Below, piece after piece: positions 8,455 through 64,000 of a stretch of DNA of 64,000 bases. Each line of letters starts with the position of its first letter. Position 1 is the first letter of the stretch. The notes under the pieces are model-generated. The model was not told the DNA's origin. It saw only the letters and a program-made list of their open reading frames with translations, and did no database searches. The stretch comes from Macrostomum lignano (Eukaryota), in contig NIVC01000426.1 of assembly GCA_002269645.1 (NCBI GenBank), positions 434,001 through 498,000 of the forward strand, in the 5' to 3' direction. The position numbers and the translations under genes are program-made.

Positions 8455-8818
8455 AGCTACCTTTCACTCGATCTATGGTAGCTTATCTCGTGTCTACCTC
8501 TCACTCTATGGTAGCTTATCTCGTGTCTACCTCTCACTCTATGGTAGCTTATCTCGTGTCTACCTCTCACTCTATGGTAGCTTATCTCGTGTCTACCTCT
8601 CACTCTATGGTAGCTTATCTCGTGTCTACCTCTCTCACCATGTGGTATCTTGTCTTGTGTCTACCTCTCACTCTATGGTATCTTGTCTCGTATCTATCTC
8701 TCTCACTATGTGGTATCTTGTCTTGTGTCTACCTCTCACTCTATGGTATCTTGTCTCGTATCTACCTCTCTCACCATGTGGTATCTTGTCTTGTGTCTAC
8801 CTCTCACTCTATGGTATC
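8455..8818. repeat. 33-bp minisatellite TCTCACTCTATGGTAGCTTATCTCGTGTCTACC upstream of frizzled exon 1
   Basis: Tandem copies giving the 11-aa HSMVAYLVSTS pseudo-repeat. Confidence 0.93.
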
Positions 8819-8873
8819 CACACCCAACCCGTTCCCCTCCTCAATACTCAGATCCCAAGTCCGTCGAGATCCC

Positions 8874-26199: not shown

Positions 26200-34486
<8,287 letters not shown>

Positions 34487-36331: not shown

Positions 36332-36769
36332 ATGGGTCGCAGATCTGGAGGAGGAGGCGGTGGCGGCGGCTTCATGCGCAGGCCGGCCGCCCCGCCACTG
36401 GCCGCTCCGCGGCCCAGCAACAATGTGCCAGCCGCTAGGCCGCCGGCACAGCCCGCCCCGGCTGCATCGGCCCCCTCGGGCGGCGGCGGCTTCCTGTCGA
36501 ACATGGCATCCACAGCCGGCGGAGTGGCCATCGGGCACACCATCGGACACGCCATCACTGGCAGCTTCGGCGGCAGCGGCGGAGCTGTCGAATCTGCCGC
36601 TGACCCGGGTGCTGCCCAGCAGCAGCAGCAGCAGCAGCCCTGCCAATACGAGATGGAGCAGCTAATGAACTGCAGCGTTAACCAGCAGGATATTAGCCTG
36701 TGCGCCGGCTATAGCGAGATTCTTAAACAATGCCGACAGCGCTTCGGCACCGGGGCTCAGTGGCAGTGA
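36332..36769 (+). CDS. CHCHD2: CHCHD2/CHCHD10-family mitochondrial protein, 145 aa, intronless
   Basis: Arg/Pro/Ala N-terminus, GGGFLSNMASTAGGVAIGHTIGHAITGSFGG helix, twin CX9C (PCQYEMEQLMNC, LCAGYSEILKQC). Confidence 0.93.
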   Translation: MGRRSGGGGGGGGFMRRPAAPPLAAPRPSNNVPAARPPAQPAPAASAPSGGGGFLSNMASTAGGVAIGHTIGHAITGSFGGSGGAVESAADPGAAQQQQQQQPCQYEMEQLMNCSVNQQDISLCAGYSEILKQCRQRFGTGAQWQ

Positions 36770-37184
36770 GCGATTCAATTAGCCACCAAAATGGAACTTG
36801 TCTGTTCAGTTAGATAAAAAAGAGAAGCAGTTAGCCGTAGTAGTAATAGTAGTAGTAGTAGCTGTGACACCTTGAATTTGTGTTTATCCAGAGTAAAAAA
36901 GTCCTGGTCAATATTTAAGCTTACTAAACTATATGCACTATTCTACTAACAGTAGTGTAATGAACATTTATCCAGCATATTTTCTACCATCGTTATTGTT
37001 TTCTCAAGAACTTGTTCAACAAAAGCGAATAATTAACATAAACGTCGCCAATGAGATTAAAATAGAAGCAAATGCACTGGCTAAAGCGCTGTCAACTTTG
37101 TCCTGCGTAAGTTGATGTCTTTTTCTCAGTTATTTTCTTAGTATTAAGAAATGGTCATGCAGTTTTGTGATACCAATTTGTTCC

Positions 37185-38030
37185 TTTAGTTCCTCCTGTC
37201 TTCACTTTCCCTGTCCTTCATTATTCTTCTGTCCTTTTGTTCCCATATCCTCATGTGATTCAGTTCCCATATCCTTCAGTTCCTCCTGTCCTTCAGTTCC
37301 TCCTGTCCTTCAGTTCCTCCTGTCCTTCAGTTCCTCCTGTCCTTCAGTTCCTCCTGTCCTTCAGTTCCTCCTGTCCTTCAGTTCCTCCTGTCCTTCAGTT
37401 CCTCCTGTCCTTCAGTTCCTCCTGTCCTTCAGTTCCTCCTGTCCTTCAGTTCCTCCTGTCCTTCAGTTCCTCCTGTCCTTCAGTTCCTCCTGTCCTTCAG
37501 TTCCTCCTGTCCTTCAGTTCCTCCTGTCCTTCAGTTCCTCCTGTCCTTCAGTTCCTCCTGTCCTTCAGTTCCTCCTGTCCTTCAGTTCCTCCTGTCCTTC
37601 AGTTCCTCCTGTCCTTCAGTTCCTCCTGTCCTTCAGTTCCTCCTGTCCTTCAGTTCCTTCTGTCCTTCAGTTCCTCCTGTCCTTCAGTTCCTCCTGTCCT
37701 TCAGTTCCTTCTGTCCTTCAGTTCCTCCTGTCCTACAGTTCCCCTTATCTCCTCTCCTGTCCTTAAGTTCCCTTATCTTTCAGTTCCTCCTGTCCTTCAG
37801 TTCTTCCTGTCCTACAGTTCCCCTTATCTCCTCTCCTGTCCTTAAGTTCCCTTATCTTTCAGTTCCTCCTGTCCTTCAGTTCCTCCTGTCCTTCGTTTCC
37901 TCCTGTCCTTCAGTTCCTCCTGTCCTTCAGTTCCTCCTGTCCTTCAGTTCCTCATCCTTCAGTTCCTCGTCCTTCAGTTCCTCGTCCTTCAGTTCCTCAT
38001 CCTTCAGTTCCTCCTGTCCTTCAGTTGCCA
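37185..38030. repeat. 17-bp pyrimidine-rich minisatellite CCTTCAGTTCCTCCTGT, CHCHD2-CHMP3 spacer
   Basis: ~45 copies. Confidence 0.97.
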
Positions 38031-42277: not shown

Positions 42278-45200
42278 ATGGCTAGCAAAGACGCTCAGCA
42301 ACAGCAGCTGTGCTATTTTTATCAGCGTGGCAACTGTCGCCATGGCAACCAGTGCCGATTCTTGCACGCTCGTCCCCCGGCACCGCTTGCAGCAGCAGCA
42401 GAATCATCAGTGGAAGGAGGTCCCGCCGTTGCCCGGGTAACCATCAGCACAGTCTGCTGGTATTTGAAACGCGACGGAGTCTGTCCCCATGGCGACCGGT
42501 GCCGGTTCAGCCACGACCTGAGCAGCGCCGTCAGGCAGGACAGCTCGAAGAGTTCTGCCAAGGCGCAGACGCTCCAAGCGTGCGTGTTCTACCAGCGCGG
42601 CAGTTGCAAGCGCGGCCAGAACTGCTGGTATCGGCATATTGATCCGGCGGGCGCCGCCCCGTTGGCTCAGGTGAGCAGCTTTATCTTCTACTCGGCAGAT
42701 AAACTGCTAGCTCGAAATTGCACGCATTCGAAAACGAGTAAAATTTACAGCTCGTAAGCTTGAAACTTCACAATGGGAATACCGTTACTTTACAAACGTT
42801 TAATTATGAAACTTAATTAGCTCGAATCTTCATCAGCTCAAAACTCCATTAGCTCAAAACTTCATTAGCTCAAACCTCCATTAGCTCAAAACTCCATTAG
42901 CTCAAAACTTCATTAGCTCAAAACTCCATTAGCTCAAAACTCCATTAGCTCAAAACTCCATTAGCTCAAAACTCCATTAGCTCAAACCTCCATTAGCTCA
43001 AAACTCCATTAGCTCAAAACTTCATTAGCTCAAAACTCCATTAGCTCAAAACTCCATTAGCTCAAAACTCCATTAGCTCAAAACTCCATTAGCTCAAACC
43101 TTCATTAGCTCAAAACTCCATTAGCTCAAAACTCCATTAGCTCAAAACTCCATTAGCTCAAAACTCTATTAGCTCAAAACTCCATTAGCTCAAAACTCCA
43201 TTAGCTCAAAACTCTATTAGCTCAAAACTCCATTAGCTCAAACCTTCATTAGCTCAAAACTCCATTAGCTCAAACCTTCATCAGCTCAAAACTCCATTAG
43301 CTCAAACCTTCATTAGCTCAAACCTTCATTAGCTCGAACCTTCATTAGCTCAAACCTTCATTAGCTCAAAACTCTATTAGCTCAAACCTTCATTAGCTCA
43401 AAACGCCATCAACTCAAAACTTAATTAGCTCAAACCTTCATTAGCTCAAAACTCAATTAGCTCAAAACTTCATTAGCTCAAACCTTCATTAGCTCAAACC
43501 TTCATTAGCTCAAACCTTCATCAGCTCAAACCTTCATTAGCTCAAACCTTCATTAGCTCAAACCTTCATTAGCTCAAACCTTCATCAGCTCAAACCTTCA
43601 TTAGCTCAAACCTTCATTAGCTCAAAACTCCATTAGCTCAAACCTTCATTAGCTCAAAACTCCATTAGCTCAAACCTTCATTAGCTCAAAACTCCATTAG
43701 CTCAAAACTCCATTAGCTCAAACCTTCATTAGCTCAAACCTTCATTAGCTCAAAACTCCATCAACTCAAAACTCAATTAGCTCAAAACTTCATTAGCTCA
43801 AACCTTCATTAGCTCAAAACTCCATTAGCTCAAACCTTCATCAGCTCAAAACTCCATTAGCTCAAAACTCCATTAGCTCGAACCTTCATTAGCTCAAACC
43901 TTCATTAGCTCAAAACTCCATTAGCTCAAACCTTCATTAGCTCAAAACGCCATCAACTCAAAACTTAATTAGCTCAAAACTTCATTAGCTCAAACCTTCA
44001 TTAGCTCAAAACTCAATTAGCTCAAAACTTCATTAGCTCAAAACTTCATTAGCTCAAACCTTCATTAGCTCAAACCTTCATTAGCTCAAAACTCCATCAG
44101 CTCAAACCTTCATTAGCTCAAACCTTCATTAGCTCAAAACTCCATCAGCTCAAACCTTCATTAGCTCAAAACTTCATTAGCTCAAAACTCCATTAGCTCA
44201 AACCTTCATTAGCTCAAAACTCCATTAGCTCAAACCTTCATTAGCTCAAAACTTCATTAGCTCAAAACTCCATTAGCTCAAAACTCCATTAGCTCAAAAC
44301 TCCATTAGCTCAAAACTCCATTAGCTCAAACCTTCATTAGCTCAAAACTCCATTAGCTCAAACCTTCATCAGCTCAAAACTCCATTAGCTCAAACCTTCA
44401 TTAGCTCGAACCTTCATTAGCTCAAACCTTCATTAGCTCAAAACTCCATTAGCTCAAACCTTCATTAGCTCAAAACGCCATCAACTCAAAACTTAATTAG
44501 CTCAAACCTTCATTAGCTCAAAACTCAATTAGCTCAAAACTTCATTAGCTCAAACCTTCATTAGCTCAAACCTTCATTAGCTCAAACCTTCATCAGCTCA
44601 AACCTTCATTAGCTCAAACCTTCATTAGCTCAAAACTCCATTAGCTCAAACCTTCATTAGCTCAAACCTTCATTAGCTCAAAACTCCATTAGCTCAAACC
44701 TTCATTAGCTCAAAACTCCATCAACTCAAAACTTAATTAGCTCAAACCTTCATTAGCTCAAAACTCCATTAGCTCAAAACTCCATTAGCTCAAACCTTCA
44801 TTAGCTCAAACCTTCATTAGCTCAAAACTCCATCAACTCAAAACTCAATTAGCTCAAAACTTCATTAGCTCAAACCTTCATTAGCTCAAAACTCAATTAG
44901 CTAAAAACTTCATTAGCTCAAAACTTCATTAGCTCAAACCTTCATTAGCTCAAACCTTCATTAGCTCAAAACTCCATCAGCTCAAACCTTCATTAGCTCA
45001 AACCTTCATTAGCTCAAAACTCCATCAGCTCAAACCTTCATTAGCTCAAAACTTCATTAGCTCAAAACTCCATTAGCTCAAACCTTCATTAGCTCAAAAC
45101 TTCATTAGCTCAAAACTCCATTAGCTCAAACCTTCATTAGCTCAAAACTCCATTAGTTTAAAACTTCATTAGCTCAAAACTCCATTAGCTCAAAACTCCA

Positions 45201-48200: not shown

Positions 48201-51200
48201 GTTTTAGTGCTGGGTTCCATCAGGTGTTCCAGCGCTGGGTTTCATCAGGTGTTTTAGCGCTGGGTTCCATCAGGTGTTTTAGTGCTGGGTTTCATCAGGT
48301 GTTCCAGTGCTTGGTTCCATCAGGTGTTCCAGTGCTTGGTTCCATCAGGTGTTCTAGCGCTGGGTTCCATCAGGTGTTTTAGCGCTTGGTTCCATCAGGT
48401 GTTTTAGCGCTTGGTTCCATCAGGTGTTTTAGCGCTTGGTTCCATCAGGTGTTTTAGCGCTTGGTTCCATCAGGTGTTTTAGCGCTGGGTTCCATCAGGT
48501 GTTTTAGCGCTGGGTTCCATCAGGTGTTCTAGCGCTGGGTTCCATCAGGTGTTCCAGTGCTTGGTTCCATCAGGTGTTCTAGCGCTGGGTTCCATCAGGT
48601 GTTTTAGCGCTTGGTTCCATCAGGTGTTTTAGCGCTGGGTTCCATCAGGTGTTTTAGCGCTTGGTTCCATCAGGTGTTTTAGCGCTTGGTTCCATCAGGT
48701 GTTTTAGCGCTTGGTTCCATCAGGTGTTTTAGCGCTTGGTTCCATCAGGTGTTTTAGCGCTTGGTTCCATCAGGTGTTTTAGCGCTGGGTTCCATCAGGT
48801 GTTTTAGCGCTTGGTTCCATCAGGTGTTTTAGCGCTGGGTTCCATCAGGTGTTTTAGCGCTTGGTTCCATCAGGTGTTTTAGCGCTTGGTTCCATCAGGT
48901 GTTTTAGCGCTGGGTTCCATCAGGTGTTTTAGCGCTTGGTTCCATCAGGTGTTTTAGCGCTTGGTTCCATCAGGTGTTTTAGCGCTTGGTTCCATCAGGT
49001 GTTTTAGCGCTTGGTTCCATCAGGTGTTTTAGCGCTTGGTTCCATCAGGTGTTTTAGCGCTGGGTTCCATCAGGTGTTTTAGCGCTTGGTTCCATCAGGT
49101 GTTTTAGCGCTGGGTTCCATCAGGTGTTCTAGCGCTGGGTTCCATCAGGTGTTCTAGCGCTGGGTTCCATCAGGTGTTTTAGCGCTTGGTTCCATCAGGT
49201 GTTTTAGCGCTGGGTTCCATCAGGTGTTTTAGCGCTGGGTTCCATCAGGTGTTCTAGCGCTGGGTTCCATCAGGTGTTCCAGCGCTGGGTTTCATCAGGT
49301 GTTTTAGCGCTGGGTTCCATCAGGTGTTTTAGTGCTGGGTTTCATCAGGTGTTCCAGTGCTTGGTTCCATCAGGTGTTCCAGTGCTTGGTTCCATCAGGT
49401 GTTCTAGCGCTGGGTTCCATCAGGTGTTCTAGTGCTGGGTTCCATCAGGTGTTCTAGTGCTTGGTTCCATCAGGTGTTCTAGCGCTGGGTTCCATCAGGT
49501 GTTCCAGTGTGCATCGTCCTGTATGTGTAATTCTAGCTTTTTTCACTTGAAATAAAGTTCATTATGCACTTTTAACCCGGACGGCAGGCAATGCAGGTGA
49601 CGGTGCGCGAGTCCCCACAGCTGCCCAGACGCCTGCTGAAAACTTGCCAGTCCGGCATCAACAAATGGCTGTCGGAGAGGCAGACGAACTGCTTGAAGAA
49701 CGACTGCGCCTGTCCAGTGTTTCGCCAGTTCCTGCGCTGGCTGGACCGCGGCCTCGAGGATCTGTTCACCACAGGGCTTCAGCTGGTGCGTCTATCACCC
49801 GATGCGGTAATCTGTCACTCCCAATCACCCGATGCGGCAGTCTGTCACTCTCAATCACCCGATGCGGCAGACTGTCACTCCCAATCACCCGATGCGGCAG
49901 TCTGTCACTCTCAATCACCCGATGCGACAGGCTGTCATTCTCAATCACCCGATACGGCAGTCTGTCACTCCCTATCGCCCAGTGCGGCAGTCTGTCACCC
50001 CAATCACCCGATGCTGCAGTCTCACTCCCAATCACCCGATGCGGCAGACTGTCACTGTCAATCACCAGATGCGGCAGACTGTCACTGTCAATCACCAGAT
50101 GCGGCAGTCTGTCACTCCCAATCACCCGATGCTGCAGTCTGTCACTCCCAATCACCCTATGCGGCAGTCTGTCACTCTCAATCACCCGATGCTGCAGTCT
50201 GTCACTCCCAATCACCCTATGCGGCAGTCTGTCACTCCCAATCACCCTATGCGGCAGTCTGTCACTCTCAATCACCCGATGCTGCAGTCTCACTCCCAAT
50301 CACCCGATGCGGCAGACTGTCACTCCCAATCACCCGATGCGGCAGACTGTCACTGTCAATCACCAGATGCGGCAGACTGTCACTGTCAATCACCAGATGC
50401 GGCAGTCTGTCACTCCCAATCACCCGATGCTGCAGTCTGTCACTCCCAATCACCCTATGCGGCAGTCTGTCACTCTCAATCACCCGATGCTGCAGTCTGT
50501 CACTCCCAATCACCCGATGCTGCAGTCTGTCACTCCCAATCACCCGATGCGGCAGACTGTCACTCCCAATCACCCGATGCGGCAGTCTGTCACTCCCAAT
50601 CACCCGATGCGGCAGTCTGCCACTCCCAATCACCCGATGCGGCAGACTGTCACTCCCAATCACCCGATGCGGCAGTCTGTCACTCCCAATCACCCGATGC
50701 GGCAGTCTGTCACTCCCAATCACCTGATGTGGCAGTCTGTCACTCTCAATCACCCGATGCGGCAGACTGTCACTCCCAATCACCTGATGCTGCAGTCTGT
50801 CACTCCCAATCACCCGATGCGGCAAACTGTCACTCCCAATCACCCGATGCGGCAAACTGTCACTCCCAATCACCTGATGCGGCAGTCTGTCACTCCCAAT
50901 CACCCGATGCGGCAGTCTGTCACTTCCAATCACCTGATGTGGCAGTCTGTCACTCTCAATCACCCGATGCGGCAGACTGTCACTCCCAATCACCTGATGC
51001 GGCAGTCTGTCACTCCCAATCACCTGATGCGGCAGTCTGTCACTCCCAATCACCCGATGCGGCAGTCTGTCACTCCCAATCACCTGATGCGGCAGTCTGT
51101 CACTCTCAATCACCCGATGCGGCAGACTGTCACTCCCAATCACCTGATGCGGCAGTCTGTCACTCCCAATCACCTGATGCGGCAGTCTGTCACTCCCAAT

Positions 51201-53303
51201 CACCCGATGCGGCAGACTGTCCCTCCTGCCTATCGATATCCCAAAGGCGTACTCCGCCCCACCCCCGCAGTACAAGCGCGAGCTGGAAGCGGCCCAAGCG
51301 GGCATCTTAATCTACACTCCCGAGCAGCTGAGGGAAAAATTTGCCCAGGCAGCAGCGGCAACCGCAGAATCAAAGGATTCCGCAGACGTAAGAGAAGACG
51401 AAACAGAAGAGGCTGATGACAACAATGATGAAGACGACTATGACGAAGATTCCAGCGATGAGAACGAAGAAGGCGACTCTGTGCAGCGACCGTCGCAGCA
51501 GCAGCTTCGCGATCCTGTCCGCCGCGGCACCGAGATCGCACTGCGCCGTCTGGAACTGCGCGACAGCGTCGCCTCCTTGACTGTCCGTCGGCTGGTCGTT
51601 GAGCTTCGCTGTCTCCGCTGTCGCCGGAAGCTGGCGGCCAACCTTAGCGCCGATTCCAAAGCCGGCTACGTGTCGATGGCCTGTGCTCAGTGCGGCTCCG
51701 ACCTGCGCGCCGGCTTCCGGCCGAGCCTGCTGCACTCGTTTAGCGGCAATCCGGCCGTTGTTGGCTTCTTAGACTTGACCGGCTGCTCGGCCGAGGATGC
51801 CCTGCTGTCCGCCGGCGACTGCGAATTCGTCACTGTCTGTCTGGGTTGCCAGCTGCCGCACACGCACCACGGACAGCTAGCTGGTAACGGCGGACAGCCG
51901 ATGCGCCACTGCTGCCTCCGCTGCCATGCCTGGGGCGGCTTCGTGGCCGAGGGCGTCCGACTGACCGTGCTCAGCGCGCCGGATGTGGCCGATGGGAAAG
52001 TGAGTCGGGGACCGTTAGGACTTCCTTTGGTTTTTATGATTCCTTGATTCCTTTTGGTATGGGATTCCCGTTATTTTGGGATTCCCATTGGTTTGAGATT
52101 CCCGTTAGTTTGGGAATCCCGTTGGTTGGGGATTCTCGTTGGTTTTGGAATCCCGTTGGTTTGGGATTCCCGTTGGTTTGGGAATCCCATTGGTTAGGGA
52201 TTCCCATTGGTTAGGGATTCCCGTTGGTTAGGGATTCCCATTGGTTAGGGATTCCCGTTGGTTAGGGATTCCCATTGGTTAGGAATTCCCGTTGGTTTAG
52301 AATTTCTTTTGGAGATGGGATTTACTTCGGACTGCAGTTTCCTTTGATTTTTCGATTCCCTTTGTGTATGGGATTCCCTTTGGGCTTGAGATTCCTTTGT
52401 GTATGAGATTTCCTGCAGGTTTGAGATTCCCTTTGAGTTTTGAGTCCCTTAGATTCCTTGGGATTTTAAAAGATTTTTTATTACTTTGGTTCGAGAATTC
52501 TATTGAAGTTGGGATTTTTTATTGGTTGAGTATTCGCAATCTTCTTTTGCAATCAATTATTGAACAGTTTAATCTTCATATTCAGAATAAATACTGTAAC
52601 GTATTTAGCGTACAATGAATCCAATTAAATATAATTAAGTGACTCAGATCAAGCATGGAAAATATGGAATATAATGATAATGTACCAATTTGCCTAAATA
52701 TCAGTTGCGCTCTCGTCACTTTAAAACACTGGAACGGTTGAATCACAGATTTATATTTTTAGAGTTGTTAATTCCTAACAAAAATATTCAGTCATATAGA
52801 CTAGCCATTTTGCCCCCTGTTGGGCAACTCAATAGTATTTTCATTGGGATTCCGCAAATATTTCTACCGTATATTTTGTTCAGTCAAGCGGAGCAGCCAA
52901 GCAACAGCAGAAGAAGCCGAAGAAGCCAATAGAGCCGGACATCCGGCCCGGCCAGCCGTTGCCTAGCAACGGCACCTGTCGTCACTACAAGCGCAGCTAT
53001 CGCTGGCTTCGCTTCCCCTGCTGCGGCCGGGCATTCCCATGCGACATTTGTCACGATGAGGCCGCGCCAGGCGATCACGAGATGGCGTGGGCGGTCAGGA
53101 TGCTGTGCGGCTACTGCGCCAAGGAGCAGCCGGTCAGCGACAAGTGCTCCAGCTGCGGCGCCGGCATGTCGCGGGCGCGCACCTCGCACTGGGAGGGCGG
53201 CCGCGGCTGTCGCGACGTTAAACGAATGTCGCGCAACGAGAAGAAGAAGTACGCAAATTTGAATAAAACTGTTAGCAGGCGGGCAGCCGCTGCTGGCAAA
53301 TGA
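42278..53303 (+). CDS. 3xCCCH + CHY-type zinc-finger protein (S. pombe C18H10.09-like), ~710 aa; join(42278-42670,45520-45912,49588-49785,51271-51999,52884-53303)
   Basis: Three C-x7/8-C-x5-C-x3-H fingers; acidic tract; Cys-rich CLRC/CAQC/CLGC region; C-terminal GTCRHYKRSYRWLRFPCCGRAFPCDICHD...WEGGRGCRD. All introns GT-AG, phase 0; exon 3 has an alternative in-frame acceptor at 49597. Confidence 0.85.
42815..45430. repeat. 16-bp minisatellite TTAGCTCAAAACTCCA with variants, ~163 copies, zinc-finger gene intron 1
   Basis: Unit spacing 16; variants ACTCC/CCTTC/ACTTC. Confidence 0.98.
45950..49508. repeat. 25-bp minisatellite GTGTTCTAGCGCTGGGTTCCATCAG, ~142 copies, intron 2
   Basis: Fills ~97% of the 3.67-kb intron. 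Confidence 0.98.
49795..51222. repeat. 30-bp minisatellite CACTCCCAATCACCCGATGCGGCAGTCTGT, ~47 copies, intron 3
   Basis: Starts <10 nt after the donor at 49786. Confidence 0.98.
52035..52470. repeat. Degenerate ~21-bp repeat GGGATTCCCGTTGGTT, intron 4
   Basis: GGGATTCCC palindromic core repeated and decaying 3'-ward. Confidence 0.8.
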
Positions 53304-54650
53304 TAGACTACAAGCTACTGTTAGTAATATGTAGTCGGCGACATTGAAGTGTAGCTGTACATGAATTTAGAAAATACATAAAAATGTACTGCCTAAACAT
53401 TTATGACACTGCCATAATTACTCAAATCTTTTGAATGTCAGATTTCTCTTTTGTGTTTTCAAAGTACAATTATATTTAGTCATATGGACTAGCCATTGTG
53501 CCCCCTTCGGGGAACTCTATAATAACTATATAGTACTCCGATATGCAAAAATACGGTACGGTTACGGAAAAAAATAATTAAACTTCTTTTGAATTTGTCG
53601 CTGAGAATGTATTTTCATATCATATTTTCAGATACAGTCAAATATCTTATGTTGAATTAGTGATAGGCGGTATCTGGACTGCTCTCATTACGATTAAATT
53701 AATCTGTCAAAATGGTCGCAACATGCATAGAAACTACCACTGCATAGACTCATGGATAGTCATTAAAAGCATGTCTGCGCCCTTGTTATTAGATGTCTAG
53801 ATGGTGGCGTTAGAATCTGAGTCTTTAATGGTCCGACCGGGCGTAGCTTGGTTGGGTGTTAAACCAGTGGGGCGTGGCTCTTGTGCGTTAGTGCGGGGGT
53901 GGTGGGCCGGGCCTTGGTCACGTGCCCGCGGCCTGGGTGGCGTTTATTTAATACGGTGCGGGCTGTCGCTGACCCGCCAAGCGCGTATTGATTTTTTTTC
54001 TCGCTTTTAAGTCTCCAAGGTTTTATTTGGCTTTCAAGTCCGGTAAATTAAAGTTAATAAATACGCTCGAATACTCGTACAATAGGGCCAGGCTCGAACC
54101 TGCGCCTCTCGTGCCAACTGCCTTGACTTCGTCTCACTGGTTTAATGTGTTTAAGAGTTCAATGTCAATGCACGCTGCCAGTTCAAGAAGGGTTCACTGA
54201 TCTTTGACGCTGCCTGTCTTAAAAATCAATTGAATATGCCAAAATGATCCCAATTTTCTGCTCAATTTAGCATAAAATATTCAAATATATACTTATTTTG
54301 TTTATTTTCTCTTGTTTGCAAATAGTTGACTCTTTCAATTATGCCTTGTAAAGTTAAATTCGATACATATCGGCTAAAATTGATGCGTAAAATTCACATC
54401 AGCCAAGCTGAGCACGCAGACGGACACACGGAATACTGCGCAGGCACGCGCTCACAGGTTGTACATGTATGTCTTCAGTGGTCCCTGGATGGTGGGATTA
54501 GCGATAATGCCACAAGTTCACAAATGCCAAGTTTATTGTGTGACCGCGTGCGGAATCGAACCCGCGGCATTTTAGTTTGAGAACAGACTTGGTACCGCTC
54601 CGCTTCGTTTCCAACAATCACTTCTACGAGTATATAATTGTTAATATAAG

Positions 54651-54855
54651 GGTTCTAGCGTAGTGGTTAGAGCGTCGGACTTGCGACTGAAAGGTCGGGG
54701 GTTTGATTCTCGACCCAATCGAAACAATTTGTGTCCTTGAGCAAGACACTTAACTCCATCTTTCAAATGGGTACCAGCATTTAGTTGAGGTGTGTGGCAA
54801 CCCCCCCTCCCCAGTCCTTGGACTGAACAGCCGTACGCAGCCTTAAGATGCGCCA
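54651..54855 (+). mobile_element. tRNA-derived SINE
   Basis: A-box TAGCGTAGTGG, B-box-like GGTTTGATTCTC; body GTGTCCTTGAGCAAGACACTTAACTC...GGACTGAACAGCCGTACGCAGC shared with 62746-62955. Confidence 0.85.
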
Positions 54856-54884
54856 CGCAAGGCGCAATAGCTGCGGCTGAGCTG

Positions 54885-54977
54885 TCGGTTGCACACCTGC
54901 CCATTGGGTCGAGAATCGAAGCCCCCCCCCCGACCTTTCAGTCGCGAGTCCGACGCTCTAACCACTAGGCTACAACC
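54885..54977 (-). mobile_element. Internally deleted copy of the same SINE (tRNA head joined to tail)
   Basis: Minus strand reads GGTTGTAGCCTAGTGGTTAGAGCGTCGGACTCGCGACTGAAAGGTC...TTCGATTCTCGACCCAAT then GGGCAGGTGTG, the tail seen in the 62.9-kb copy. Confidence 0.8.
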
Positions 54978-56528
54978 GCTGTGCCACAATCTGCAGTATA
55001 TAAAATACTAAAACTACTAACAAAACCACCGTGCAAATAACGTTTTCGATTCGACAAAAAGAGACAGTTTGACATTTTTTATTATCATGCAGTTATACAT
55101 GTATATATATATTTGTCTACTTTGTGCTTCTGCGCCTCTAGAGTCGGGCCAGTAGACACTGCTAAAAAAATCGGTCAAAAATTGCCAGCTGCAGAGTGCG
55201 CAGAAGCAATGCAAGTTCTTGCCGTGTGTGAAGCGTGTGTTTTTATCATAGCATTTTTAATATTAATAACTAAGCAATCTTAGCAAAAATTAGCATTTGC
55301 GTGGGTACTAAACACGAAAAAATCGTGTGTGTTTTCAGTTGGCAGTTCGATGCGTGGGTTAATTGGAGTGGCTAGGTTCTCTCTCTCTTGGGGATCTGTC
55401 GTTAAACAGCATTTTTTGCGGGAAAACGCGAAAAGCATGGAAATTACGCTGAGTATGTTTAAAAAACAGTTTAACATGCATTATTATGGTAAATGGTTGA
55501 TAACTATGTATACGAAGTACTCGACTCGTATGCGCGCAAACAGAGCAGCAGTGCCATGTCGGGTTACATTGAACGAGAGCGCGTTGGGGGTTCAGAATTC
55601 AACTTGCTAAATCCAGGTTTGATTAAGGATCTTAATTGTATAATAATTATATTGATAAGCAAGTTATACAAAGCTCGATGCGAGCTTAAACATGGACAGG
55701 GGCCAGAATGGATGATGAAGGATTAAAGCAGCTGTCAAGTTGAGCAAATGTTAACACAATGCCTGTTACTTCTTACATGGCAAGCATGCATTTGTGCGGT
55801 GCAGAACGGGGCTGGCTGCTTTTCGTTGCGTTCGGATAAAATTACTATGAGTAGCTAGGAGTGCTTTTTTAAAACTGATTTTCTGTGTTGCGTGCCAAAA
55901 AGTCAGATCATGAATTAGACTTAATTAGTTTTTTTTTACATCTAAGAGCGAGCGAGTGGTGAACTCGAAACAAAATTAATAAAACAAGAATTGGCTGAAC
56001 AATATTTGTTAGCATAAATCTCATTCAACAGGATCTGAGGAATATTTTGCAGTCAGCCAGTTCTTGTTTAGCGCAGATAGGCAAAATACGACAGCTACAG
56101 AAGCTTAAATCACAATGCATTAATCTCGTGCTCAAGGTGTGCTCATAAACAATTGACAAGAACAGCTGGGAGAGGGAGAGAGAGTCAAGGGGAGGCGGCA
56201 TGTGCACAGCGTCAAAATTACAATCGGGTACAAAAATCACAAAGTAGAAAAACACGAAAGCAGCACAAATCACACCAGAGTTCGTGGTGTCCTTTATTAT
56301 AAATATTTTAATGCTATCCTCACGACGATGCAGCAGTTTAAAACGGGACAAGTTTGGATTTTTGTGCTGGGAGGATTTTAAGGGCGTAAGGGTGCGCATT
56401 GCGGGTTAATACCAGTTACAAAAGCGTGAGCAGTCGTGCTTTTGACTGTTGCTCAATAAAATGGGACTCTCCAACAGTCATGGCCAACCAGTCGGCTAAC
56501 AAGGCATGGGAAATCAGTTGGGGTCTGG

Positions 56529-59503
56529 TCAGTGGGCCTGCTGGAAGCTCACAGCTGCCGATGTCGGGGTGCCGAACGCGGCGGCGTGGCTGGCCGCGGC
56601 CAGTTGAGCAGCGGCAGCCGCGGCTGCTGCAGCCGGGTTGCCTCCGGCGGCGCCGAAACCGTTGAGCAGGCCGCCGCTGCGGGTTGTGGAGGGGGGGGCG
56701 AATTATTTATATTTATAACATTGGAATTGGCTGTTCAGTGTCTATGAGCGAACCTGTGTGCCTTCACCTGATACTGTCCATGGCCGAGACTCCCACCTGC
56801 ACCATTCATGCAGCCCCATGCACCCTGACACACTGTCTATGGCCGAGACCCCCACCTGCACCATTCATGCAGCCCCATGCACCCTGACACACTGTCTATG
56901 GCCGAGACCTGTGCCATTCACGCAGCTTCACGCACCCTGACACACTGTCTATGGCCGAGACCTGTGCCATTCACGCAGCTTCACGCACCCTGACACACTG
57001 TCTATGGCCGAGACCCCACCTGCCCCATTCACGCAGCCCCACGTACCCTGACACACTTTCTATGGCCGAGACCATTGCCGAGAACCCCACCTGCGCCAAT
57101 CACGCAGCTCCATGCACCCTGACTGTCTATGGCCGAGACCCTACCTGCGCCAATCACATGTATATTTACCTGGCGGCTCCACCTTGATAAGCGGAGGAGG
57201 CGGCAGCAGCGGCGGCGGCAGCTGCGGACGCATAATTAGCGTAGTTGATTGGCTGCTGCAGGTAGCTGAGCTGGTTGTAGGCCTGGTAAGCCAGCGGGCT
57301 GGCCGCCGTGGCGCCAGCCGTCGCCGCGTAGTAACCGTATGGCGTCATTAGAGCCTGCATAAAAAATATAGAAAATAAAACAGTTAGTTATTAATCTATA
57401 TTGATTGATTCTTTCATTGGGTTCAATTTAATTAAAATAATTGGCTTGGTGGTAGAGGGCCAAGTCTAAACCAATTGTCAGCTGCCCTAACCCGGATATC
57501 TGTTGCTTTTGTGGTGTCCTGAACCGTGAACAAGCAACAATGCTCTTTCAGTCCCGAATGCTCGCTGCAGTAAGGCTGCACGCGGATGATCCCACAGTCA
57601 CGCCAAGCTGATTTCACTGGCTGGTTCCCGGGATTTTCCGTTCCGCATCCTTTCGTTGCAGCTGGCGGGGTGGCCTGTGAATCGCTGATTTATTGACGGA
57701 AGCCTTGCTAGTGGCGCTTCTCACGCAGGTGAGGTCAGCTTGAGCCTTGTTCGGGGCAGTCAGGGTTTCATGTGCTCGGGCACAAACTTGGCTATCAGTG
57801 ACTGTGCCAGAGACTGGCTATCAGTGACTGTGCCGGACAATTGGCTATCAGTGACTGCGCCACAAAATTGGCTATCAGTGACTGTGCCAGAGACTTGGCT
57901 ATCAGTGACTGTGCCACAAACTTGGCTATCAGTGACTGTGCCAGACAATTGGCTATCAGTCAGTGACTGTGCCAGCGACTGGCTATCAGTGACTGTTACA
58001 CAAACTTGGCTATCAGTGACTGTGCCAGACAATTGGCTATCAGTGACTGTGCCAGAGACTTGTCTATCAGTGACTGTGCGAGACAATTGGCTATCAGTGA
58101 CTGTGCCAGACAAATTGGCTATCAGTGACTGTGCCAGACAATTGGCTATCAGTGACTGTGCCGGACAATTGGCTATCAGTGACTGTGCCAGAGACTTGTC
58201 TATCAGTGACTGTGTCAGACAATTGGCTATCAGTGACTGTGCGAGACAATTGGCTATCAGTGACTGTGCCAGACAATTGGCTATCAGTGACTGTGCCAGA
58301 CAATTGGCTATCAGTGACTGTGCCAGACAATTGGCTATCAGTGACTGTGCCAGACATTTGGCTATCAGCGACTGTGCCAGACAATTGGCTATCAGTGACT
58401 GTGCCAGAGACTGGCTATCAGTGGCTGTGCCGGACAATTGGCTATCAGTGACTGTGCCAGAGACTGGCTATCAGTGGCTGTGCCGGACAATTGGCTATCA
58501 GTGACTGTGCCAGAGACTGGCTATCAGTGGCTGTGCCAGAGACTTGGCTATACTATCAGTGACTGCGCCACAAACTTGGCTATCAGTGACTGTGCCGGAC
58601 AATTGGCTATCAGTGACTGTGCCGGACAATTGGCTATCAGTGACTGTGCCGGACAATTGGCTATCAGTGACTGTGCCGGACAATTGGCTATCAGTGACTG
58701 TGCCAGAATGTCTCAGTGACTCACCGCGGCATTCTCCTTGTCGTTGCTCTCCTTGCCCCAGGAGCACTTGCAGGGCTGGCCGCCGACATCCTTGCCGTGC
58801 ATGGTGATGATGGCCTTGGTTGCGCCCTCGTGCGTGTCGAAGCGGACAAAGGCGTAGCCCTTCTCTTTGAACACGCGGACTTCAAGGATCTCGCCGAAGT
58901 CTTTGAATGCTTCTCTGAGCAGCTCCTCTGCAAGTGATAGGAATATAGGATCAATAAGAATTCTGTTTTTTTTAAGATTGATCAGAATGGGGTTTGGGAT
59001 CGATCAGAATTAGGTTTTTGGATCGATCAGGATGGGGTTCGGGATCAATCAGAGTGGGTTTTGGGATCATGGGTGGGTTTTGGGATATATCAGGATGGGT
59101 TTTGGGATCGATCAGGATGGTTTTTGGGATCGATCAGGATTAGGTTTGGGATCAATCAGAGTGGGTTTTGGGATTGATGAAGATTGGTTTTGGGATCGAC
59201 CAGGATTGGGTTTGGGATCGATTAGGATTGGGTTCGGGATCAATCAGAGTGGGTTTTGGATCGATCAGGATTGGGTTCGGGATCGATCAGGATTGGGTTT
59301 GGGATCGATTAGGATTGGATTCGGGATCAATCAGAGTGGGTTTTGGATCGATCAGGATTGGGTTCGGGATCGATCAGCATCAGTTTAGGTATCAAATTGG
59401 GACTCACCGCACAGCCCACGCGTGATGCCGCCAACGTAGACAGTGCAGTTTGAGTTGGAAGCTGCCTGAGCAACTTCATCGTAGTTCAGCGGTTTCTGAT
59501 CGG
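56529..59503 (-). CDS. TIA1/TIAL1: TIA-1/TIAR (nucleolysin) RNA-binding protein, 3' part; exons 59408-59503, 58725-58927, 57170-57354, 56529-56676; RRM1-2 exons presumably beyond 64000
   Basis: KPLNYDEVAQAASNSNCTVYVGGITRGLC|EELLREAF...VFKEKGYAFVRF...CKCSWGKE matches TIA-1 RRM3; Tyr/Ala/Gln low-complexity tail; GT-AG phases consistent. Confidence 0.9.
56765..57150. repeat. ~59-bp minisatellite in the last TIA-1 intron
   Basis: CTGACACACTGTCTATGGCCGAGAC... at 56825 and 56884; ~7 copies. Confidence 0.92.
57785..58720. repeat. 27-bp minisatellite CAATTGGCTATCAGTGACTGTGCCAGA, TIA-1 intron
   Basis: ~34 copies abutting the donor at 58724. Confidence 0.97.
58980..59390. repeat. Degenerate ~21-bp repeat GGGTTTGGGATCGATCAGGATT, TIA-1 intron
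   Basis: Fills most of the 480-nt intron. Confidence 0.88.
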
Positions 59504-60354
59504 CTGCAATTTTGAAAAAATTTTACAGTTTCCAACTGAAATTTGGTTAGAACACTTGGAATACACTGTGTAGACTGCGTGAGCCGCGCCAACAATGCCC
59601 GCCACCAGTGCGCTCAAAATTGAGAACTCCCAGCCGGAAACGGCTCCTTCTCTCCCTCTCTGACTGCTTCGTCGGCCTGATCCTTTTTAAAAAAGTCAGT
59701 CTCCACGCAGGTGGGGCCTCATCAGTGTTGGAATGGGATCCGTCAGGGCAGGATATCCTCTTCAGAGTCTGGCTGAATCCACTGGGTCTCTTCATTAGTT
59801 CTCCACCTGAGGTGCTCCGATTCAATTCCCTCAGAATTCTGGCCTGAGATGAGGCTGAGGCGGGCGGGCCAGCGTTCCCATTGTGAGCTGGGATTCTCCA
59901 ATTTTCTTTAACAAAAGAACCAGCAGCCAGCCAGAGATCCCAGCGCGCGGTGCTAAACCGCTTTAACAGGATTCATCCATAGCCTCTGGCTTGAGTTCGG
60001 GTGTGTTGCGCAGATTCCGAGTCGAGAATGCGGAGAGCGAGAGGATCGGAGTTGAAAAAAGAGGAGAAACAAGGAGGGGAGAGGAGGGGAGGAGGGACAC
60101 GCGTCACTCAAAGTCTTCTATGCAGACTGGTGCAGTGGCGGAGTCCCTGTCCGGCCGATCAATAAGTATCGATATTGGGCTGATCTCTGCAAGCAAGTTT
60201 TTTTTACTTTTTTTACTCTGCAGGGCAGCGCTGGCTGTCTACGTAATTTAATTGACTTGTGCCGGGCGGGAGACAGCCCCCCCCCCCCTGCAGGCGTGCC
60301 TCCATCGACAGGCACTTGTTGACTAGTGGCTGTCCGAAGGGGGTTGTGATTGCC

Positions 60355-61655: not shown

Positions 61656-62715
61656 CAGTGGTGCCGTGCCGCCATGGCCCCGGATGTTTCAATTCGCCTT
61701 TAATTTCGCCCTCTTTGCCCACAGTGCAATGTCAATCATCCAGAAGTGCATGCATCAGAAGTTCTACTAAAAAGCAGTCATGTATTTCGCATGCACTTGT
61801 ACACCCCTATAGCCGTGTCTCTGCAAGAGAGGTAGGAGAGAGAAGTCGCTGGGCAGGGGCAAAGAATGGCTAAGTGAATTCACACACTTTGCGGGAGTCG
61901 CCTGGAACACCGGAAGTGAGCGCTGAGAAGCGGAGGGTACGGGGGAAGCAGATGTGTATGCGGATGGAGGCCCCAGTCTCCTCTCCTCTCACCGTGCCGT
62001 GCAACTTCTTCAACCATCGTTTTTCTCTCCTTCACGCAGCCAGCTGGTAGCCCCATTCTCGCACTCCACAGCGTATCACGTGAGTCACGCTGCATGCGGG
62101 AGGCGGACAGAATTTTGGCATACATAAATGACTAAAGTGTGCAGAGTGAGTCTGCGCCCTCGCGACGGGACCGCCAGCACGCCTGTTTAACAGCAGTCGC
62201 TGTCAGGGGCATCTCATTGTTGAGCATGAGCACCGCAGAGTATGGAGCGAGAGAGAGAGAGAGCGGATGGAGAAGATTTGGATTAGAGGGATTTGGGCTT
62301 AGACTGCGGACTGCTGCCCTTCCCCCTCCTCCTTGCCCTTCCCAGGTGAGGCGCAGCGCCAGCGATGGCGGAGGCTGAGGCTGGGCTTTTGTCAGCAACT
62401 GACAGGTCATGTTTTATGCAGCTGCCGGTGCCGCTTTGCTCTGCGCTGCTCCCACAGCTGAGCAGGTGGCTGAGCCCGGCAGACTCAGTGGCGGCTATTA
62501 TACTGCCAGAGCTGCTGCTCAAGGTGAGGCCACCAAGCGGCATTCATATTTCATGCGCAAACGCAAATGGACGGGGGGCGTCGGTGCCGCATCATCGGTC
62601 CCGCTCTCAGAGCAGCTTCAAACAGCTCCACAACACTCCTCCCTGACTCAATTGTTCCTCTTTCTGATGGAGTTTATTTTTTGTGCGAGAGATTTCCAAT
62701 AGATAGCAGAGTCCA

Positions 62716-62746
62716 GAGTCTTCGCTGTAAGAGACCGTCGATATGG
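62716..62746 (-). other. Spliced-leader-like fragment (5' part of flatworm SL exon)
   Basis: Minus strand CCATATC-GACGGTCTCTTACAGCGAAGACTC vs recalled Macrostomum SL CCGTAAA-GACGGTCTCTTACTGCGAAGACTC-AATTTATTGCATG: 23/24 core, 27/31 ungapped. Reference is from memory. Confidence 0.6.
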
Positions 62747-62955
62747 ATTGAAGCCTAATAGTTAGAGTGTCGGGGGTTCGATTCCCGACCCACTCGGAAC
62801 AATTTGTGTCCTTGAGCAAGACACTTAACTCTGCACTGCTTCAGTTCACCCAGCTGTAAAATGGGTTCCAGCATTAGCTGGAGTAATTGAGGCTGTGTGG
62901 CGACCCCCCAGTCTTTGGACTGAACAGCCGTACGCAGCTTTCAGATGCGGGCAGG
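62746..62955 (+). mobile_element. tRNA-derived SINE, same family as 54651, anticodon arm deleted
   Basis: B-box GGTTCGATTCCC; CORE-like CAGCTGTAAAATGGG; deletion lies between two GTCGG microhomologies relative to the 54651 copy. Confidence 0.85.
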
Positions 62956-64000
62956 TGTGATCAATTATTTATCATTATTAGAGTCCAGGTATCGATGGCT
63001 AGCCTATGAAAGCTCGGCCCCAACTCGTATTAGATGTGTCAGCTGAGCTCAATTCGCCTGAAAGAAAGACAGAGTCAGAGTCAGAGTCAGAGTCAGAGAG
63101 AGGGGCATCTGAGAAGACAGATCTAGGCAACAACTTGTGCGATGTTTGCACAATGATGCTCCGTCTATATTGTATCTCAGAAAATTGCAGTCACGAACAG
63201 TACGCCTCCCAACCTCTCAGCATTTCCTGGCTCCGATAGAGAGCTCGGCTCGTGTGGAAGAGCCTCGGTTTCTTGTATTATCCGAGTACAACTGTGTTTA
63301 TACACCAGTACATCCACTATACTCTTCTGGCGTGACAGTTGGTCAGCAGTCAGCACCCTGGCAGGTAGCTACGGTTGCCTGTAGAAAGTCAGGGCTGCTG
63401 TACACCCTGTGTGAGCGTGTGTGTGAGTGCGTGCGGACAGTATTGACACGCTTGGATGCGCTCCCAATGCCGTTGGCTGTTGCGTTGGCGCTGCACCAAC
63501 TTTGCTAACCCCTGAGCACCAGGAAACAAACAGGAGGGAGAAAAATTAGATTGAAAAGAGAAGAGCGGAGAGACAGAGACCGATGACGGACGTGCTTAGA
63601 AGTCTGGCCTGATCATCTCAGCTCAGCTCTGTCTGTAATAACTCAGGCCACCGCACAAGCACCTCATTGTGAGCCGCCACTTCTGCTCTCCGTATGCATG
63701 CCCTCTCCCCCTCTCTTTCCGCTTCCTACGCCATCATTTTTATCGATTTCTTGTTTCCTTTTTGCCTCCAGGCGGCTGCTCCTCCCATCCCTCTGGTGTA
63801 GGTCGGTGCTGGGGGGGGGGGGGGTAAAAAAGCGGAGGGATGAGTTTTGGGTTGGACCACGACAGGGCCAAGCTGTATAGCAGCGATCCATTGTCATGCA
63901 ATGCGTTCAACTCTGCTGCTGCTGCTGCTGCTGCTTCTAGCGCTGCTGCAGAGAGGTGGAGAGATAGCCAGGGGGGGGGGAGAAAGACCCTATATGGTAT

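What the first reader, a model, noticed from the sequence alone, without database searches (positions are those of the whole stretch)
62716..62955. Spliced-leader fragment fused head-to-head with a tRNA-SINE
A 31-nt match to the 5' part of the recalled Macrostomum SL (27/31, core 23/24) lies on the minus strand, and its 5' end abuts the SINE 5' end at ~62746. The SL 3' end, AUG/GT donor and Sm site are missing, so it is not an SL RNA gene. The geometry fits capture of SL RNA or an SL-capped transcript during retrotransposition (template switch or 5' inversion), a possible link between trans-splicing and SINE mobility. It is sense to the TIA-1 pre-mRNA.
Basis: partly seen in the sequence, partly recalled or inferred. 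Interest (0 to 1): 0.75.

Follow-up and report, generated by a model that had tools for sequence, protein, structure and literature searches.

The report
Spliced-leader scrap inside one SINE insertion
A 24-base piece of the flatworm's spliced-leader RNA was copied backwards into the genome together with one short mobile element (a MIR-like SINE), apparently in a single insertion event. It is an inert scar of a kind already known from mammalian snRNA/LINE-1 chimeras, not a working gene.

Summary
Window 62716-62739 (minus strand) reads GACGGTCTCTTACaGCGAAGACTC. This is 23/24 identical to positions 9-32 of the published 45-nt Macrostomum spliced leader, and to a real SL RNA gene I recovered from a metagenome (L003). 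It is the only SL-like stretch in the window. Five bases further on, a tRNA-headed, MIR-like CORE-SINE starts in the opposite orientation and runs to 62979, not 62955.

An exact 9-bp direct repeat, AGAGTCCAG, occurs only twice in the window. One copy abuts the outer end of the SL piece and the other abuts the SINE's AT-rich tail. The SL piece and the SINE therefore most likely entered in one target-primed reverse-transcription event.

Head-to-head geometry excludes simple template switching. It fits twin priming, as described for inverted, 3'-truncated U5/U1/U2-L1 chimeras in mammals.

The piece is not an SL RNA gene or a broken one. Two other SINE heads in the window carry no SL piece, and the rest of the genome could not be reached. 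A general link between trans-splicing and SINE mobility is therefore untested.

Verdict: real, a new member of a known kind, of modest interest.

The parts
62708..62716 (.). Left target-site duplication, AGAGTCCAG
   Evidence: This exact 9-mer occurs only at 62708 and 62980 in the whole window, on either strand. Its last base (G62716) is also the first base of the SL-derived stretch, a 1-nt overlap. The chance of such a pair within +-2 nt of two fixed boundaries is about 2.5e-4 in the non-tandem part of the window.
62716..62739 (-). Spliced-leader fragment, SL positions 9-32 of 45 (GACGGTCTCTTACaGCGAAGACTC), inverted relative to the SINE
   Evidence: 23/24 to the published SL and to the L003 SL RNA gene. 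Unique in the window. Its 3' end (SL nt 32) abuts the left TSD and its 5' end faces the SINE 5' end. SL nt 30-35 form the predicted apical loop of stem-loop I in the L003 SL RNA.
62740..62744 (.). 5-nt filler GATAT at the head-to-head junction
   Evidence: It matches neither SL nt 1-8 (GCCGTAAA) nor the SINE head consensus. T62744 could instead be base 1 of the tRNA-like acceptor arm.
62745..62959 (+). CORE-SINE (MIR-like) body. It has a tRNA-like head with a box A-like site (62752-62764), box B GGTTCGATTCC (62775-62785) and an internal 20-nt deletion of the anticodon arm. The CORE-like domain is about 62803-62865, followed by a 3' region ending in GGCAGGTGTG.
   Evidence: The head aligns with the heads at 54650 (plus strand) and 54982 (minus strand). 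B box and core searches found 3 and 2 sites against about 0 expected. Local alignment to the MIR consensus, recalled from memory, scored 35 against shuffles of 9.3 +- 1.3. The 3' region aligns with copy A and with the SINE fragment in L003. ARAGORN and Rfam call no tRNA here.
62960..62979 (+). AT-rich SINE tail, ATCAATTATTTATCATTATT
   Evidence: It follows ...AGGTGTG, just as the ATT-rich tail follows ...AGGTGTT in the related SINE copy at L003 about 141-410. The right TSD follows immediately.
62980..62988 (.). Right target-site duplication, AGAGTCCAG
   Evidence: See the left TSD. Inferred empty site...CCAATAGATAGCAGAGTCCAG|GTATCGATGGCTAGCC...

Best explanation
This is one old retrotransposition scar. 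A LINE-encoded endonuclease/reverse transcriptase nicked the bottom strand and copied a full-length CORE-SINE RNA from its AT-rich tail up to its 5' end. After the staggered second nick, 9 bp away, the free 3' end of the top strand (...AGAGTCCAG-3') primed a second, short reverse transcription. The template was a different RNA: either SL RNA or the SL at the 5' end of a trans-spliced mRNA. This copy started at SL nt 32, in the predicted apical loop of the first SL hairpin, and ran towards the SL 5' end as far as nt 9. The two cDNA ends were then joined head-to-head with 5 nt of filler. The product is TSD - antisense SL(32->9) - GATAT - SINE(5'->3') - tail - TSD.

This is twin priming on a second template. 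The SL piece has no donor site, no Sm site and no promoter context, so it is inert.

Shown: the sequence identities, the orientation, the boundaries and the flanking 9-bp repeat. Inferred: the order of events, the priming step, which RNA served as template, and the enzyme (the partner LINE was not identified).
For: 1. The SL piece is real and unique: 23/24.
2. The exact 9-bp repeat occurs only twice in the window, at the outer end of the SL piece and directly after the SINE tail. The positional null is about 2.5e-4. The SL piece therefore lies inside the insertion, not beside it.
3. The geometry is that of twin priming. The 3'-most SL base touches the upstream TSD, and the SL 5' side faces the SINE 5' end.
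4. The literature describes the same anatomy for snRNA/L1 chimeras: an inverted, 3'-truncated snRNA with TSDs around the whole. U5 truncations there fall in a loop (PMC4476161). Antisense tRNA-half, 5S and U5 chimeras are likewise attributed to twin priming (PMC13174262).
5. The SL truncation point, nt 32, lies in the predicted apical loop (nt 30-35) of stem-loop I of a genuine SL RNA (L003).
6. The SL piece is not part of the SINE family. Heads A and B lack it.
7. The SINE 3' end and tail are corroborated by a related copy in L003.
Against: - This is a single locus. No empty site from an allele, homeologue or sister species could be fetched.
- Complementarity between the top-strand end and the SL is only 1 nt (G:C). 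This is weaker than typically reported for twin priming.
- The SL copy stops at nt 9 rather than at the cap, and 5 unexplained bases lie at the junction.
- The sense partner is a full-length SINE. In the mammalian cases it is a 5'-truncated LINE.
- The partner LINE and its cleavage preference are unknown.
- The loop assignment rests on a predicted fold of an environmental SL RNA gene, not this organism's own.
- A nearby (CAGAGT)n microsatellite (63072-63100) shows that AGAGTC-type motifs are locally common. This slightly weakens the TSD statistic.
Confidence: 0.55

Rival explanations
1. End-joining capture. A short free cDNA of SL RNA, or another SL-derived DNA scrap, was ligated as filler DNA between the upstream target end and the completed SINE cDNA during repair of the insertion intermediate. 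The target DNA did not prime on the SL.
For: Overlap at the TSD/SL junction is only 1 nt, and 5 nt of filler lie at the SL/SINE junction. The SL piece is truncated at both ends, covering nt 9-32 of 45. Copies A and B also seem to carry 12-15 unexplained bases between a candidate 9-bp repeat and their 5' ends.
Against: Either orientation would be equally likely, so this does not explain the twin-priming geometry. The coincidence of the break point with the predicted SL loop is also left unexplained. The final sequence alone can hardly distinguish this from twin priming.
Confidence: 0.15
2. 5' transduction or a subfamily. The source SINE copy already had an antisense SL piece just upstream, for example because it sat in or next to an SL RNA gene or pseudogene. 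A transcript starting upstream of the SINE carried that leader to this site.
For: The TSD encloses both parts, which this model also predicts. SINEs of this family do land near SL RNA genes: L003 has a related SINE fragment about 200 bp upstream of a genuine SL RNA gene, although in the same orientation.
Against: It only moves the head-to-head juxtaposition one step back. Pol III starts at the tRNA-like head, so an upstream start is needed. It needs the transcript (or its cDNA) to have begun or been cut off exactly at SL nt 32, with nothing of the rest of the SL gene carried along. No second copy with the leader is present in the window.
Confidence: 0.12
3. Two independent events. An SL relic was already at the site, and a SINE later landed next to it by chance. 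The 9-bp repeat is coincidental.
For: AGAGTC-type motifs are locally frequent: CAGAGTC occurs twice at 62707-62720 and there is a (CAGAGT)n run at 63072-63100. SL sequence encoded in the genome outside SL genes has been reported in M. lignano (PMC8629364).
Against: The 9-mer is unique to the two boundaries. No repeat of 6 nt or more directly flanks the SINE alone. The only candidate is the 5-mer TCGAT, which is expected by chance and is displaced from the tail. Finally, a free-standing 24-nt internal SL piece, with no mRNA body and no rest of the SL gene, would still need its own explanation.
Confidence: 0.06
4. A degraded SL RNA gene or pseudogene disrupted by a SINE insertion.
For: The SL core is 23/24 identical.
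Against: Homology to the L003 SL RNA gene ends at SL nt 32 on one side. Beyond the SINE there is nothing resembling SL nt 1-8 or the upstream gene sequence. There is no GT donor and no Sm site. No Rfam hit was found.
Confidence: 0.02
5. Chance resemblance to the SL.
For: None beyond the short length of 24 nt.
Against: 0 matches in 100 dinucleotide shuffles allowing up to 3 mismatches. Score 21 against a maximum of 12 in shuffles.
Confidence: 0.01

Closest known systems
Inverted snRNA/LINE-1 chimeras formed by twin priming (U5/L1, U1/L1, U2/L1; 'Group IV' snRNA pseudogenes, Doucet et al. 2015, PMC4476161), and antisense tRNA-half, 5S and U5/L1 chimeras (PMC13174262)
   Same: An Sm-class small nuclear RNA is 3'-truncated at an internal, probably single-stranded site and inverted relative to the retroelement. 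Its truncated end lies next to the upstream TSD. One TSD pair encloses the whole chimera.
   Different: The captured RNA is the spliced-leader RNA, or the SL on an mRNA, which mammals lack. The partner is a full-length tRNA-headed CORE-SINE, not a 5'-truncated L1. The host is a flatworm with an unidentified LINE partner. Junction complementarity is only 1 nt. The SL copy also lacks its first 8 nt.
[quoted passage not shown]
   Same: Two reverse transcriptions start from the two ends of the staggered break. The products join with their template-5' ends facing each other.
   Different: In L1 inversions both cDNAs come from the same RNA. Here the second template is a different RNA.
U6/L1 sense chimeras (template switching or RtcB RNA ligation; PMC6789731, PMC4476161)
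   Same: A small nuclear RNA is fused to the 5' end of a retroelement copy inside one TSD pair.
   Different: Those chimeras are in the same orientation and the snRNA is usually full length. Here the SL is inverted and truncated, so that mechanism does not apply.
Relict spliced leaders of dinoflagellate retrogenes (PMC6050394, PMC5585692)
   Same: SL sequence is fixed in genomic DNA through reverse transcription of SL-bearing RNA.
   Different: Those relics are sense-oriented, run up to the splice junction and are followed by the mRNA body. Here an internal 24-nt SL piece is inverted and attached to a SINE.
CORE-SINEs / MIR
   Same: A tRNA-like head with A and B boxes is followed by the conserved core (...TGTGTCCTTGAGCAAGACACTTAAC...CAGCTGTAAAATGGG) and then a different 3' part and tail.
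   Different: This is a flatworm family with an ATT-rich tail. Published RepeatMasker tables for three Macrostomum genomes list no SINEs at all. The comparison to MIR used a consensus recalled from memory.

Membership tests
Inverted small-RNA/retroelement chimera (twin priming) | The small-RNA segment lies in the opposite orientation to the retroelement | tested here: met
   The SL match is on the minus strand and the SINE on the plus strand.
Inverted small-RNA/retroelement chimera (twin priming) | The small RNA is 3'-truncated. Its 3'-most copied base abuts the upstream TSD and its 5' side faces the retroelement's 5' side. | tested here: met
   SL nt 32 is at 62716, the last base of the left TSD. 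SL nt 9 is at 62739, 5 nt from the SINE start.
Inverted small-RNA/retroelement chimera (twin priming) | One pair of target-site duplications encloses the whole chimera | tested here: met
   AGAGTCCAG at 62708 and 62980 are its only two occurrences in the window. The positional null is about 2.5e-4. No empty site was available to confirm this.
Inverted small-RNA/retroelement chimera (twin priming) | Complementarity between the top-strand target end and the small RNA at the priming site | tested here: inconclusive
   Only a 1-nt overlap (G62716 with SL C32).
Inverted small-RNA/retroelement chimera (twin priming) | The retroelement's 3' tail abuts the downstream TSD, at a cleavage site typical of the partner LINE endonuclease | tested here: inconclusive
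   The AT-rich tail ends at 62979 and the TSD starts at 62980. The partner LINE and its cleavage preference are unknown, so that half cannot be tested here.
SL RNA gene | A complete SL exon followed by a GT splice donor | tested here: not met
   Only SL nt 9-32 are present and the next bases are TGGACTC. Compare L003, which reads ...TTGCATG|GTAAG.
SL RNA gene | An Sm-binding site between two 3' hairpins, in a three-stem-loop fold | tested here: not met
   No homology to the L003 SL RNA beyond the 24-31 nt. L003 itself folds into three stem-loops with AGUAUUUUUAG between them.
Template-switch or RNA-ligation chimera (U6/L1 type) | The small RNA is in the same orientation as the retroelement, upstream of it | tested here: not met
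   The orientations are opposite. The orientation rule is stated in PMC13174262.
Relict SL of a retrogene | A sense SL reaching the splice junction, followed by the mRNA body | tested here: not met
   The SL stops 13 nt before its 3' end. The downstream minus-strand sequence contains the left TSD copy and target DNA. No Pfam hit was found in the nearby ORFs.
CORE-SINE (MIR-like) | A tRNA-derived head with A and B boxes | tested here: inconclusive
   Box B GGTTCGATTCC is present, as is an A-box-like AGCCTAATAG. Fuller heads at 54650 and 54982 carry TAGCGTAGTGG and TAGCCTAGTGG. However, ARAGORN and Rfam call no tRNA.
CORE-SINE (MIR-like) | The conserved central core domain | tested here: met
   Local alignment to the MIR consensus scored 35, against shuffles of 9.3 +- 1.3. 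The first 24 nt of the core recur exactly in SINE-like sequences of other organisms.
CORE-SINE (MIR-like) | A 3' end shared with a partner LINE | not testable with these tools
   No LINE with this 3' end is in the window and no TE library is available. RTE is the commonest LINE clade in Macrostomum according to PMC10468722.

The most novel reading that the evidence does not exclude
SL RNA might be a recurrent second template for the flatworm's LINE machinery, or this copy might belong to a propagating SINE subfamily with a 24-nt antisense-SL leader. In the first case, antisense SL scraps would mark many TE 5' junctions. In the second, SINE transcripts could base-pair with SL RNA. Either would give a genome-wide record of an interaction between the trans-splicing RNA pool and retrotransposition.
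Probability: 0.07. Interest if true: 0.6.

Novelty: new member of a known kind. Interest (0 to 1): 0.3.

Why it matters
If the reading is right, spliced-leader RNA joins U5, U1, U2, 5S and tRNA halves as a small RNA that retrotransposon reverse transcriptase can copy from the second end of an insertion break. It would also show that twin priming operates in a flatworm with a non-L1 LINE and a SINE partner.

On the practical side, it flags an unannotated CORE-SINE family in Macrostomum. It also warns that SL-seeded genome searches will pick up such scraps. As a single inert scar it has no expected effect on TIA-1 or on trans-splicing.

Tried and rejected
1. More SINE copies through the protein databases. 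I queried a SINE-spanning ORF and, as a control, the conserved TIA-1 RRM3. Both returned nothing, so that index does not reach this organism. The look-up of encoding contigs with a 423-aa window ORF had no record. Genome-wide enrichment and an empty site could therefore not be tested.
2. Viral-contig scans for the SL core and the SINE core gave 0 hits.
3. ARAGORN and Rfam, at gathering and permissive thresholds, gave no tRNA, no SL family and nothing credible.
4. An alternative TSD hugging the SINE alone. Only the 5-mer TCGAT was found (62738 and 62992), displaced 12 nt from the tail, and a 5-mer match at that spacing is expected by chance. Rejected.
5. My first TSD statistic, from unmasked random windows, was inflated because about 35% of the window is tandem repeat. 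I redid it with tandem repeats masked.
6. I first read GGCAGGTGTG after head B as a second SINE family. Alignment to L003 showed it is simply the reverse strand of copy A's 3' part.
7. A literature search for a printed MIR/core consensus found only unrelated primer sequences.
8. Searches for published SL-SINE chimeras found nothing.

Full report
**1. What is in the sequence**

The plus strand at 62708-62988 reads as follows:
- AGAGTCCAG, whose final G (62716) is also the first base of the next stretch
- (G)AGTCTTCGCTGTAAGAGACCGTC
- GATAT
- GGATTGAAGCC ... GGCAGGTGTG
- ATCAATTATTTATCATTATT
- AGAGTCCAG

The reverse complement of 62716-62739 is GACGGTCTCTTACAGCGAAGACTC.

The M. lignano spliced leader is given in the literature as CGGTCTCTTACTGCGAAGACTCAATTTATTGCATG (PMC8629364). 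[quoted passage not shown] The window stretch therefore equals SL positions 9-32 with a single T-to-A difference, 23/24.

It is the only SL-like stretch in the 64 kb. There were 0 matches in 100 shuffles allowing up to 3 mismatches. The ungapped score was 21 against a maximum of 12 in shuffles.

**2. An independent check of the SL**

A scan of metagenome contigs for the SL core gave three contigs. Two carry the SL at a contig end followed by coding-looking sequence, like trans-spliced transcripts.

The third, L003, holds a genuine SL RNA gene. It has the 45-nt exon, then GTAAG, then a hairpin, then AGUAUUUUUAG, then a second hairpin. It folds into three stem-loops with a z-score of -3.6.

It also shows that homology stops on both sides of the fragment.

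**3. The neighbour is a SINE, and its ends can be placed**

Three tRNA-like heads occur in the window: A at 54650 (plus), B at 54982 (minus) and C at 62744/5 (plus). A and B have TAGCGTAGTGG / TAGCCTAGTGG and GGTTTGATTC / CTTCGATTC boxes. C has the same head with a 20-nt internal deletion. The alignment puts the 5' end of C at 62744/62745, 5 nt from the SL piece.

Behind the head lies TGTGTCCTTGAGCAAGACACTTAAC...CAGCTGTAAAATGGG. This aligns with the core of mammalian MIR at score 35, against 9.3 +- 1.3 for shuffles. I call the element a CORE-SINE on that basis.

ARAGORN and Rfam do not recognise the head as a tRNA.

The 3' part of C (...CAGCCGTACGCAGCTTTCAGATGCG-GGCAGGTGTG-ATCAATTATTTATCATTATT) aligns with copy A. 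It also aligns with a 5'-truncated relative at L003 141-410, which ends ...CCAGGTGTTATTCTATTTAATTCTAATTTATTATTAATT.... The family therefore ends in an ATT-rich tail, and C ends at 62979, not at 62955.

**4. One insertion or two?**

The 9-mer AGAGTCCAG occurs exactly twice in the window on either strand. One copy is at 62708-62716, with its last base overlapping the outer end of the SL piece. The other is at 62980-62988, starting directly after the SINE tail.

My first null estimates were inflated because about 35% of this window is tandem repeat. With tandem repeats masked, a 9-mer pair within +-2 nt of two fixed boundaries turns up at about 2.5e-4 of positions.

No comparable repeat flanks the SINE alone. 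The best candidate is the 5-mer TCGAT, which is displaced from the tail.

The SL piece, the 5-nt filler, the SINE and its tail are therefore most simply one unit inserted with a 9-bp target-site duplication. The inferred empty site is ...GATAGCAGAGTCCAG|GTATCGATGG...

One caveat applies. AGAGTC-type motifs are locally common, including a (CAGAGT)n run at 63072-63100.

**5. Mechanism**

A template switch at the 5' end of the SINE RNA, or ligation of two RNAs, would place the second RNA upstream in the same orientation. That is the U6/L1 type (PMC13174262; PMC4476161). Here the orientation is opposite.

The arrangement is the one expected from twin priming. The top-strand 3' end left by the second nick is extended on an RNA. 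The base next to the upstream TSD is then the complement of the 3'-most copied RNA position (SL nt 32), and copying proceeds towards the RNA 5' end (SL nt 9). The result meets the 5' end of the first cDNA head-to-head.

Doucet et al. describe the same anatomy for U5/L1, U1/L1 and U2/L1 chimeras. The snRNA is 3'-truncated and inverted, TSDs surround the whole, and the U5 truncations fall in a loop. The 2026 catalogue attributes antisense tRNA-half, 5S and U5 chimeras to twin priming.

In the predicted fold of the L003 SL RNA, nt 30-35 form the apical loop of stem-loop I. The window fragment starts at nt 32, inside that loop. This is suggestive, but it rests on a predicted fold.

Several points are weak:
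- Only 1 nt of complementarity at the priming junction.
- 5 unexplained bases at the inner junction.
- The SL copy lacks nt 1-8.
- The partner LINE is unidentified. RTE is the commonest LINE clade in Macrostomum.

Because priming lies within the SL exon, free SL RNA and the 5' end of a trans-spliced mRNA cannot be told apart as templates.

**6. Rivals**

- End-joining capture of a free SL cDNA scrap fits the weak microhomology and the filler. It does not predict the orientation or the loop break point.
- 5' transduction from a source copy that already had an antisense SL upstream, or a subfamily with such a leader, only moves the problem back one step. It cannot be excluded without the genome. 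L003 shows that this SINE family does land near SL RNA genes, there about 200 bp upstream and in the same orientation.
- Independent adjacent events are disfavoured by the TSD.
- A disrupted SL gene is contradicted.
- Chance is contradicted.

**7. What is not supported**

The two other SINE heads in the window have no SL piece, so the piece is not part of the family. Nothing here shows enrichment of SL fragments at SINE ends. Nothing here implicates trans-splicing itself.

Attempts to reach the rest of the genome failed.

A macrostomid origin is consistent with three observations:
- The SL match.
- The SINE relative beside a Macrostomum-type SL RNA gene in L003.
- The animal gene content: TIA-1, Frizzled, ERGIC and CCCH zinc finger.

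TIA-1 RRM3 and the C-terminal exons are on the minus strand at 57169-59522. I saw no upstream RRM exons among the minus-strand frames listed for the rest of the window (read by eye). The insertion is therefore probably intronic and the SL piece sense to the gene, but this is not shown.

**8. Verdict**

It is best read as a single chimeric retro-insertion: an inverted SL fragment plus a CORE-SINE inside one 9-bp TSD, made by twin priming or a closely related junction-repair route.

This is a new member of a known kind. It has a new captured RNA, a new host and a SINE partner. It is inert, and it is so far a single case.

Noticed in passing
L003 (Ga0302322_100095745) 141-410 and 615-716: An environmental contig carries a complete Macrostomum-type SL RNA gene: a 45-nt exon, a GTAAG donor, an Sm-like AGUAUUUUUAG and a three-stem-loop fold. 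A 5'-truncated relative of the window's SINE lies about 200 bp upstream in the same orientation, after a (GGCA)n run.
   Followed up: partly
window 54629-55003: SINE copy A (54650 plus strand, full head, core with a deletion) is 3'-truncated at ...CACACCTGCC. It is abutted by an inverted solo head B (54982 to 54906, minus strand). Both 5' ends point outwards, which is the opposite of twin-priming geometry. The pair, plus 12-15 extra bases on each side, is flanked by the 9-mer AGTATATAA (54629 and 54995, with a third occurrence at 36132). The origin is unexplained.
   Followed up: partly
window 54540-54575 (minus strand): A further isolated B-box-like T-arm (GGTTCGATTCC on the minus strand) lies just upstream of copy A. 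It is possibly another SINE or tRNA-like fragment.
   Followed up: no
window 54650-54982 and 62745-62979: These are clear CORE-SINE copies. Yet the RepeatMasker tables published for M. lignano, M. cliftonense and M. hystrix list zero SINEs (PMC10468722 supplement). If the window is from Macrostomum, the family seems to be unannotated.
   Followed up: partly
window, e.g. 12-1292, 3755-5046, 12365-14940, 31781-32233, 37167-37845, 49591-51416, 57740-58807, 59032-59425: About 35% of the window consists of minisatellite or tandem arrays, measured as 12-mers recurring within 1.5 kb. Several sit inside introns of the Frizzled-like and TIA-1 genes. They produce long spurious ORFs and inflate naive repeat statistics.
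   Followed up: partly
window 63072-63100: A (CAGAGT)n microsatellite lies about 90 bp right of the insertion. Its unit resembles the TSD (AGAGTCCAG) and the duplicated CAGAGTC at 62707-62720.
   Followed up: partly
window 8391-19806 (plus strand), 32412-32954, 36332-36769, 42278-42757: Gene context: a Frizzled-family receptor (Fz domain plus 7TM, Pfam 3e-46 and 9e-64), an ERGIC/ERV-type exon, a CHCH-domain protein and a CCCH zinc-finger protein.
   Followed up: partly
L004 (Enterovibrio MAG CAMRBZ010000228.1), L005 (Alcanivorax profundi NZ_QYYA01000223.1), L006 (Nitrospirales MAG CBDFIV010000002.1): Contigs filed under bacterial genomes contain tRNA-headed SINE-like sequences with the same 24-nt core start (GTGTCCTTGRGCAAGACACTTAAC). 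They look like animal DNA contaminating these assemblies.
   Followed up: no
The search for homologous proteins returned no hits even for the highly conserved TIA-1 RRM3 segment, which matches PDB TIA-1 at 4e-39.
   Followed up: no
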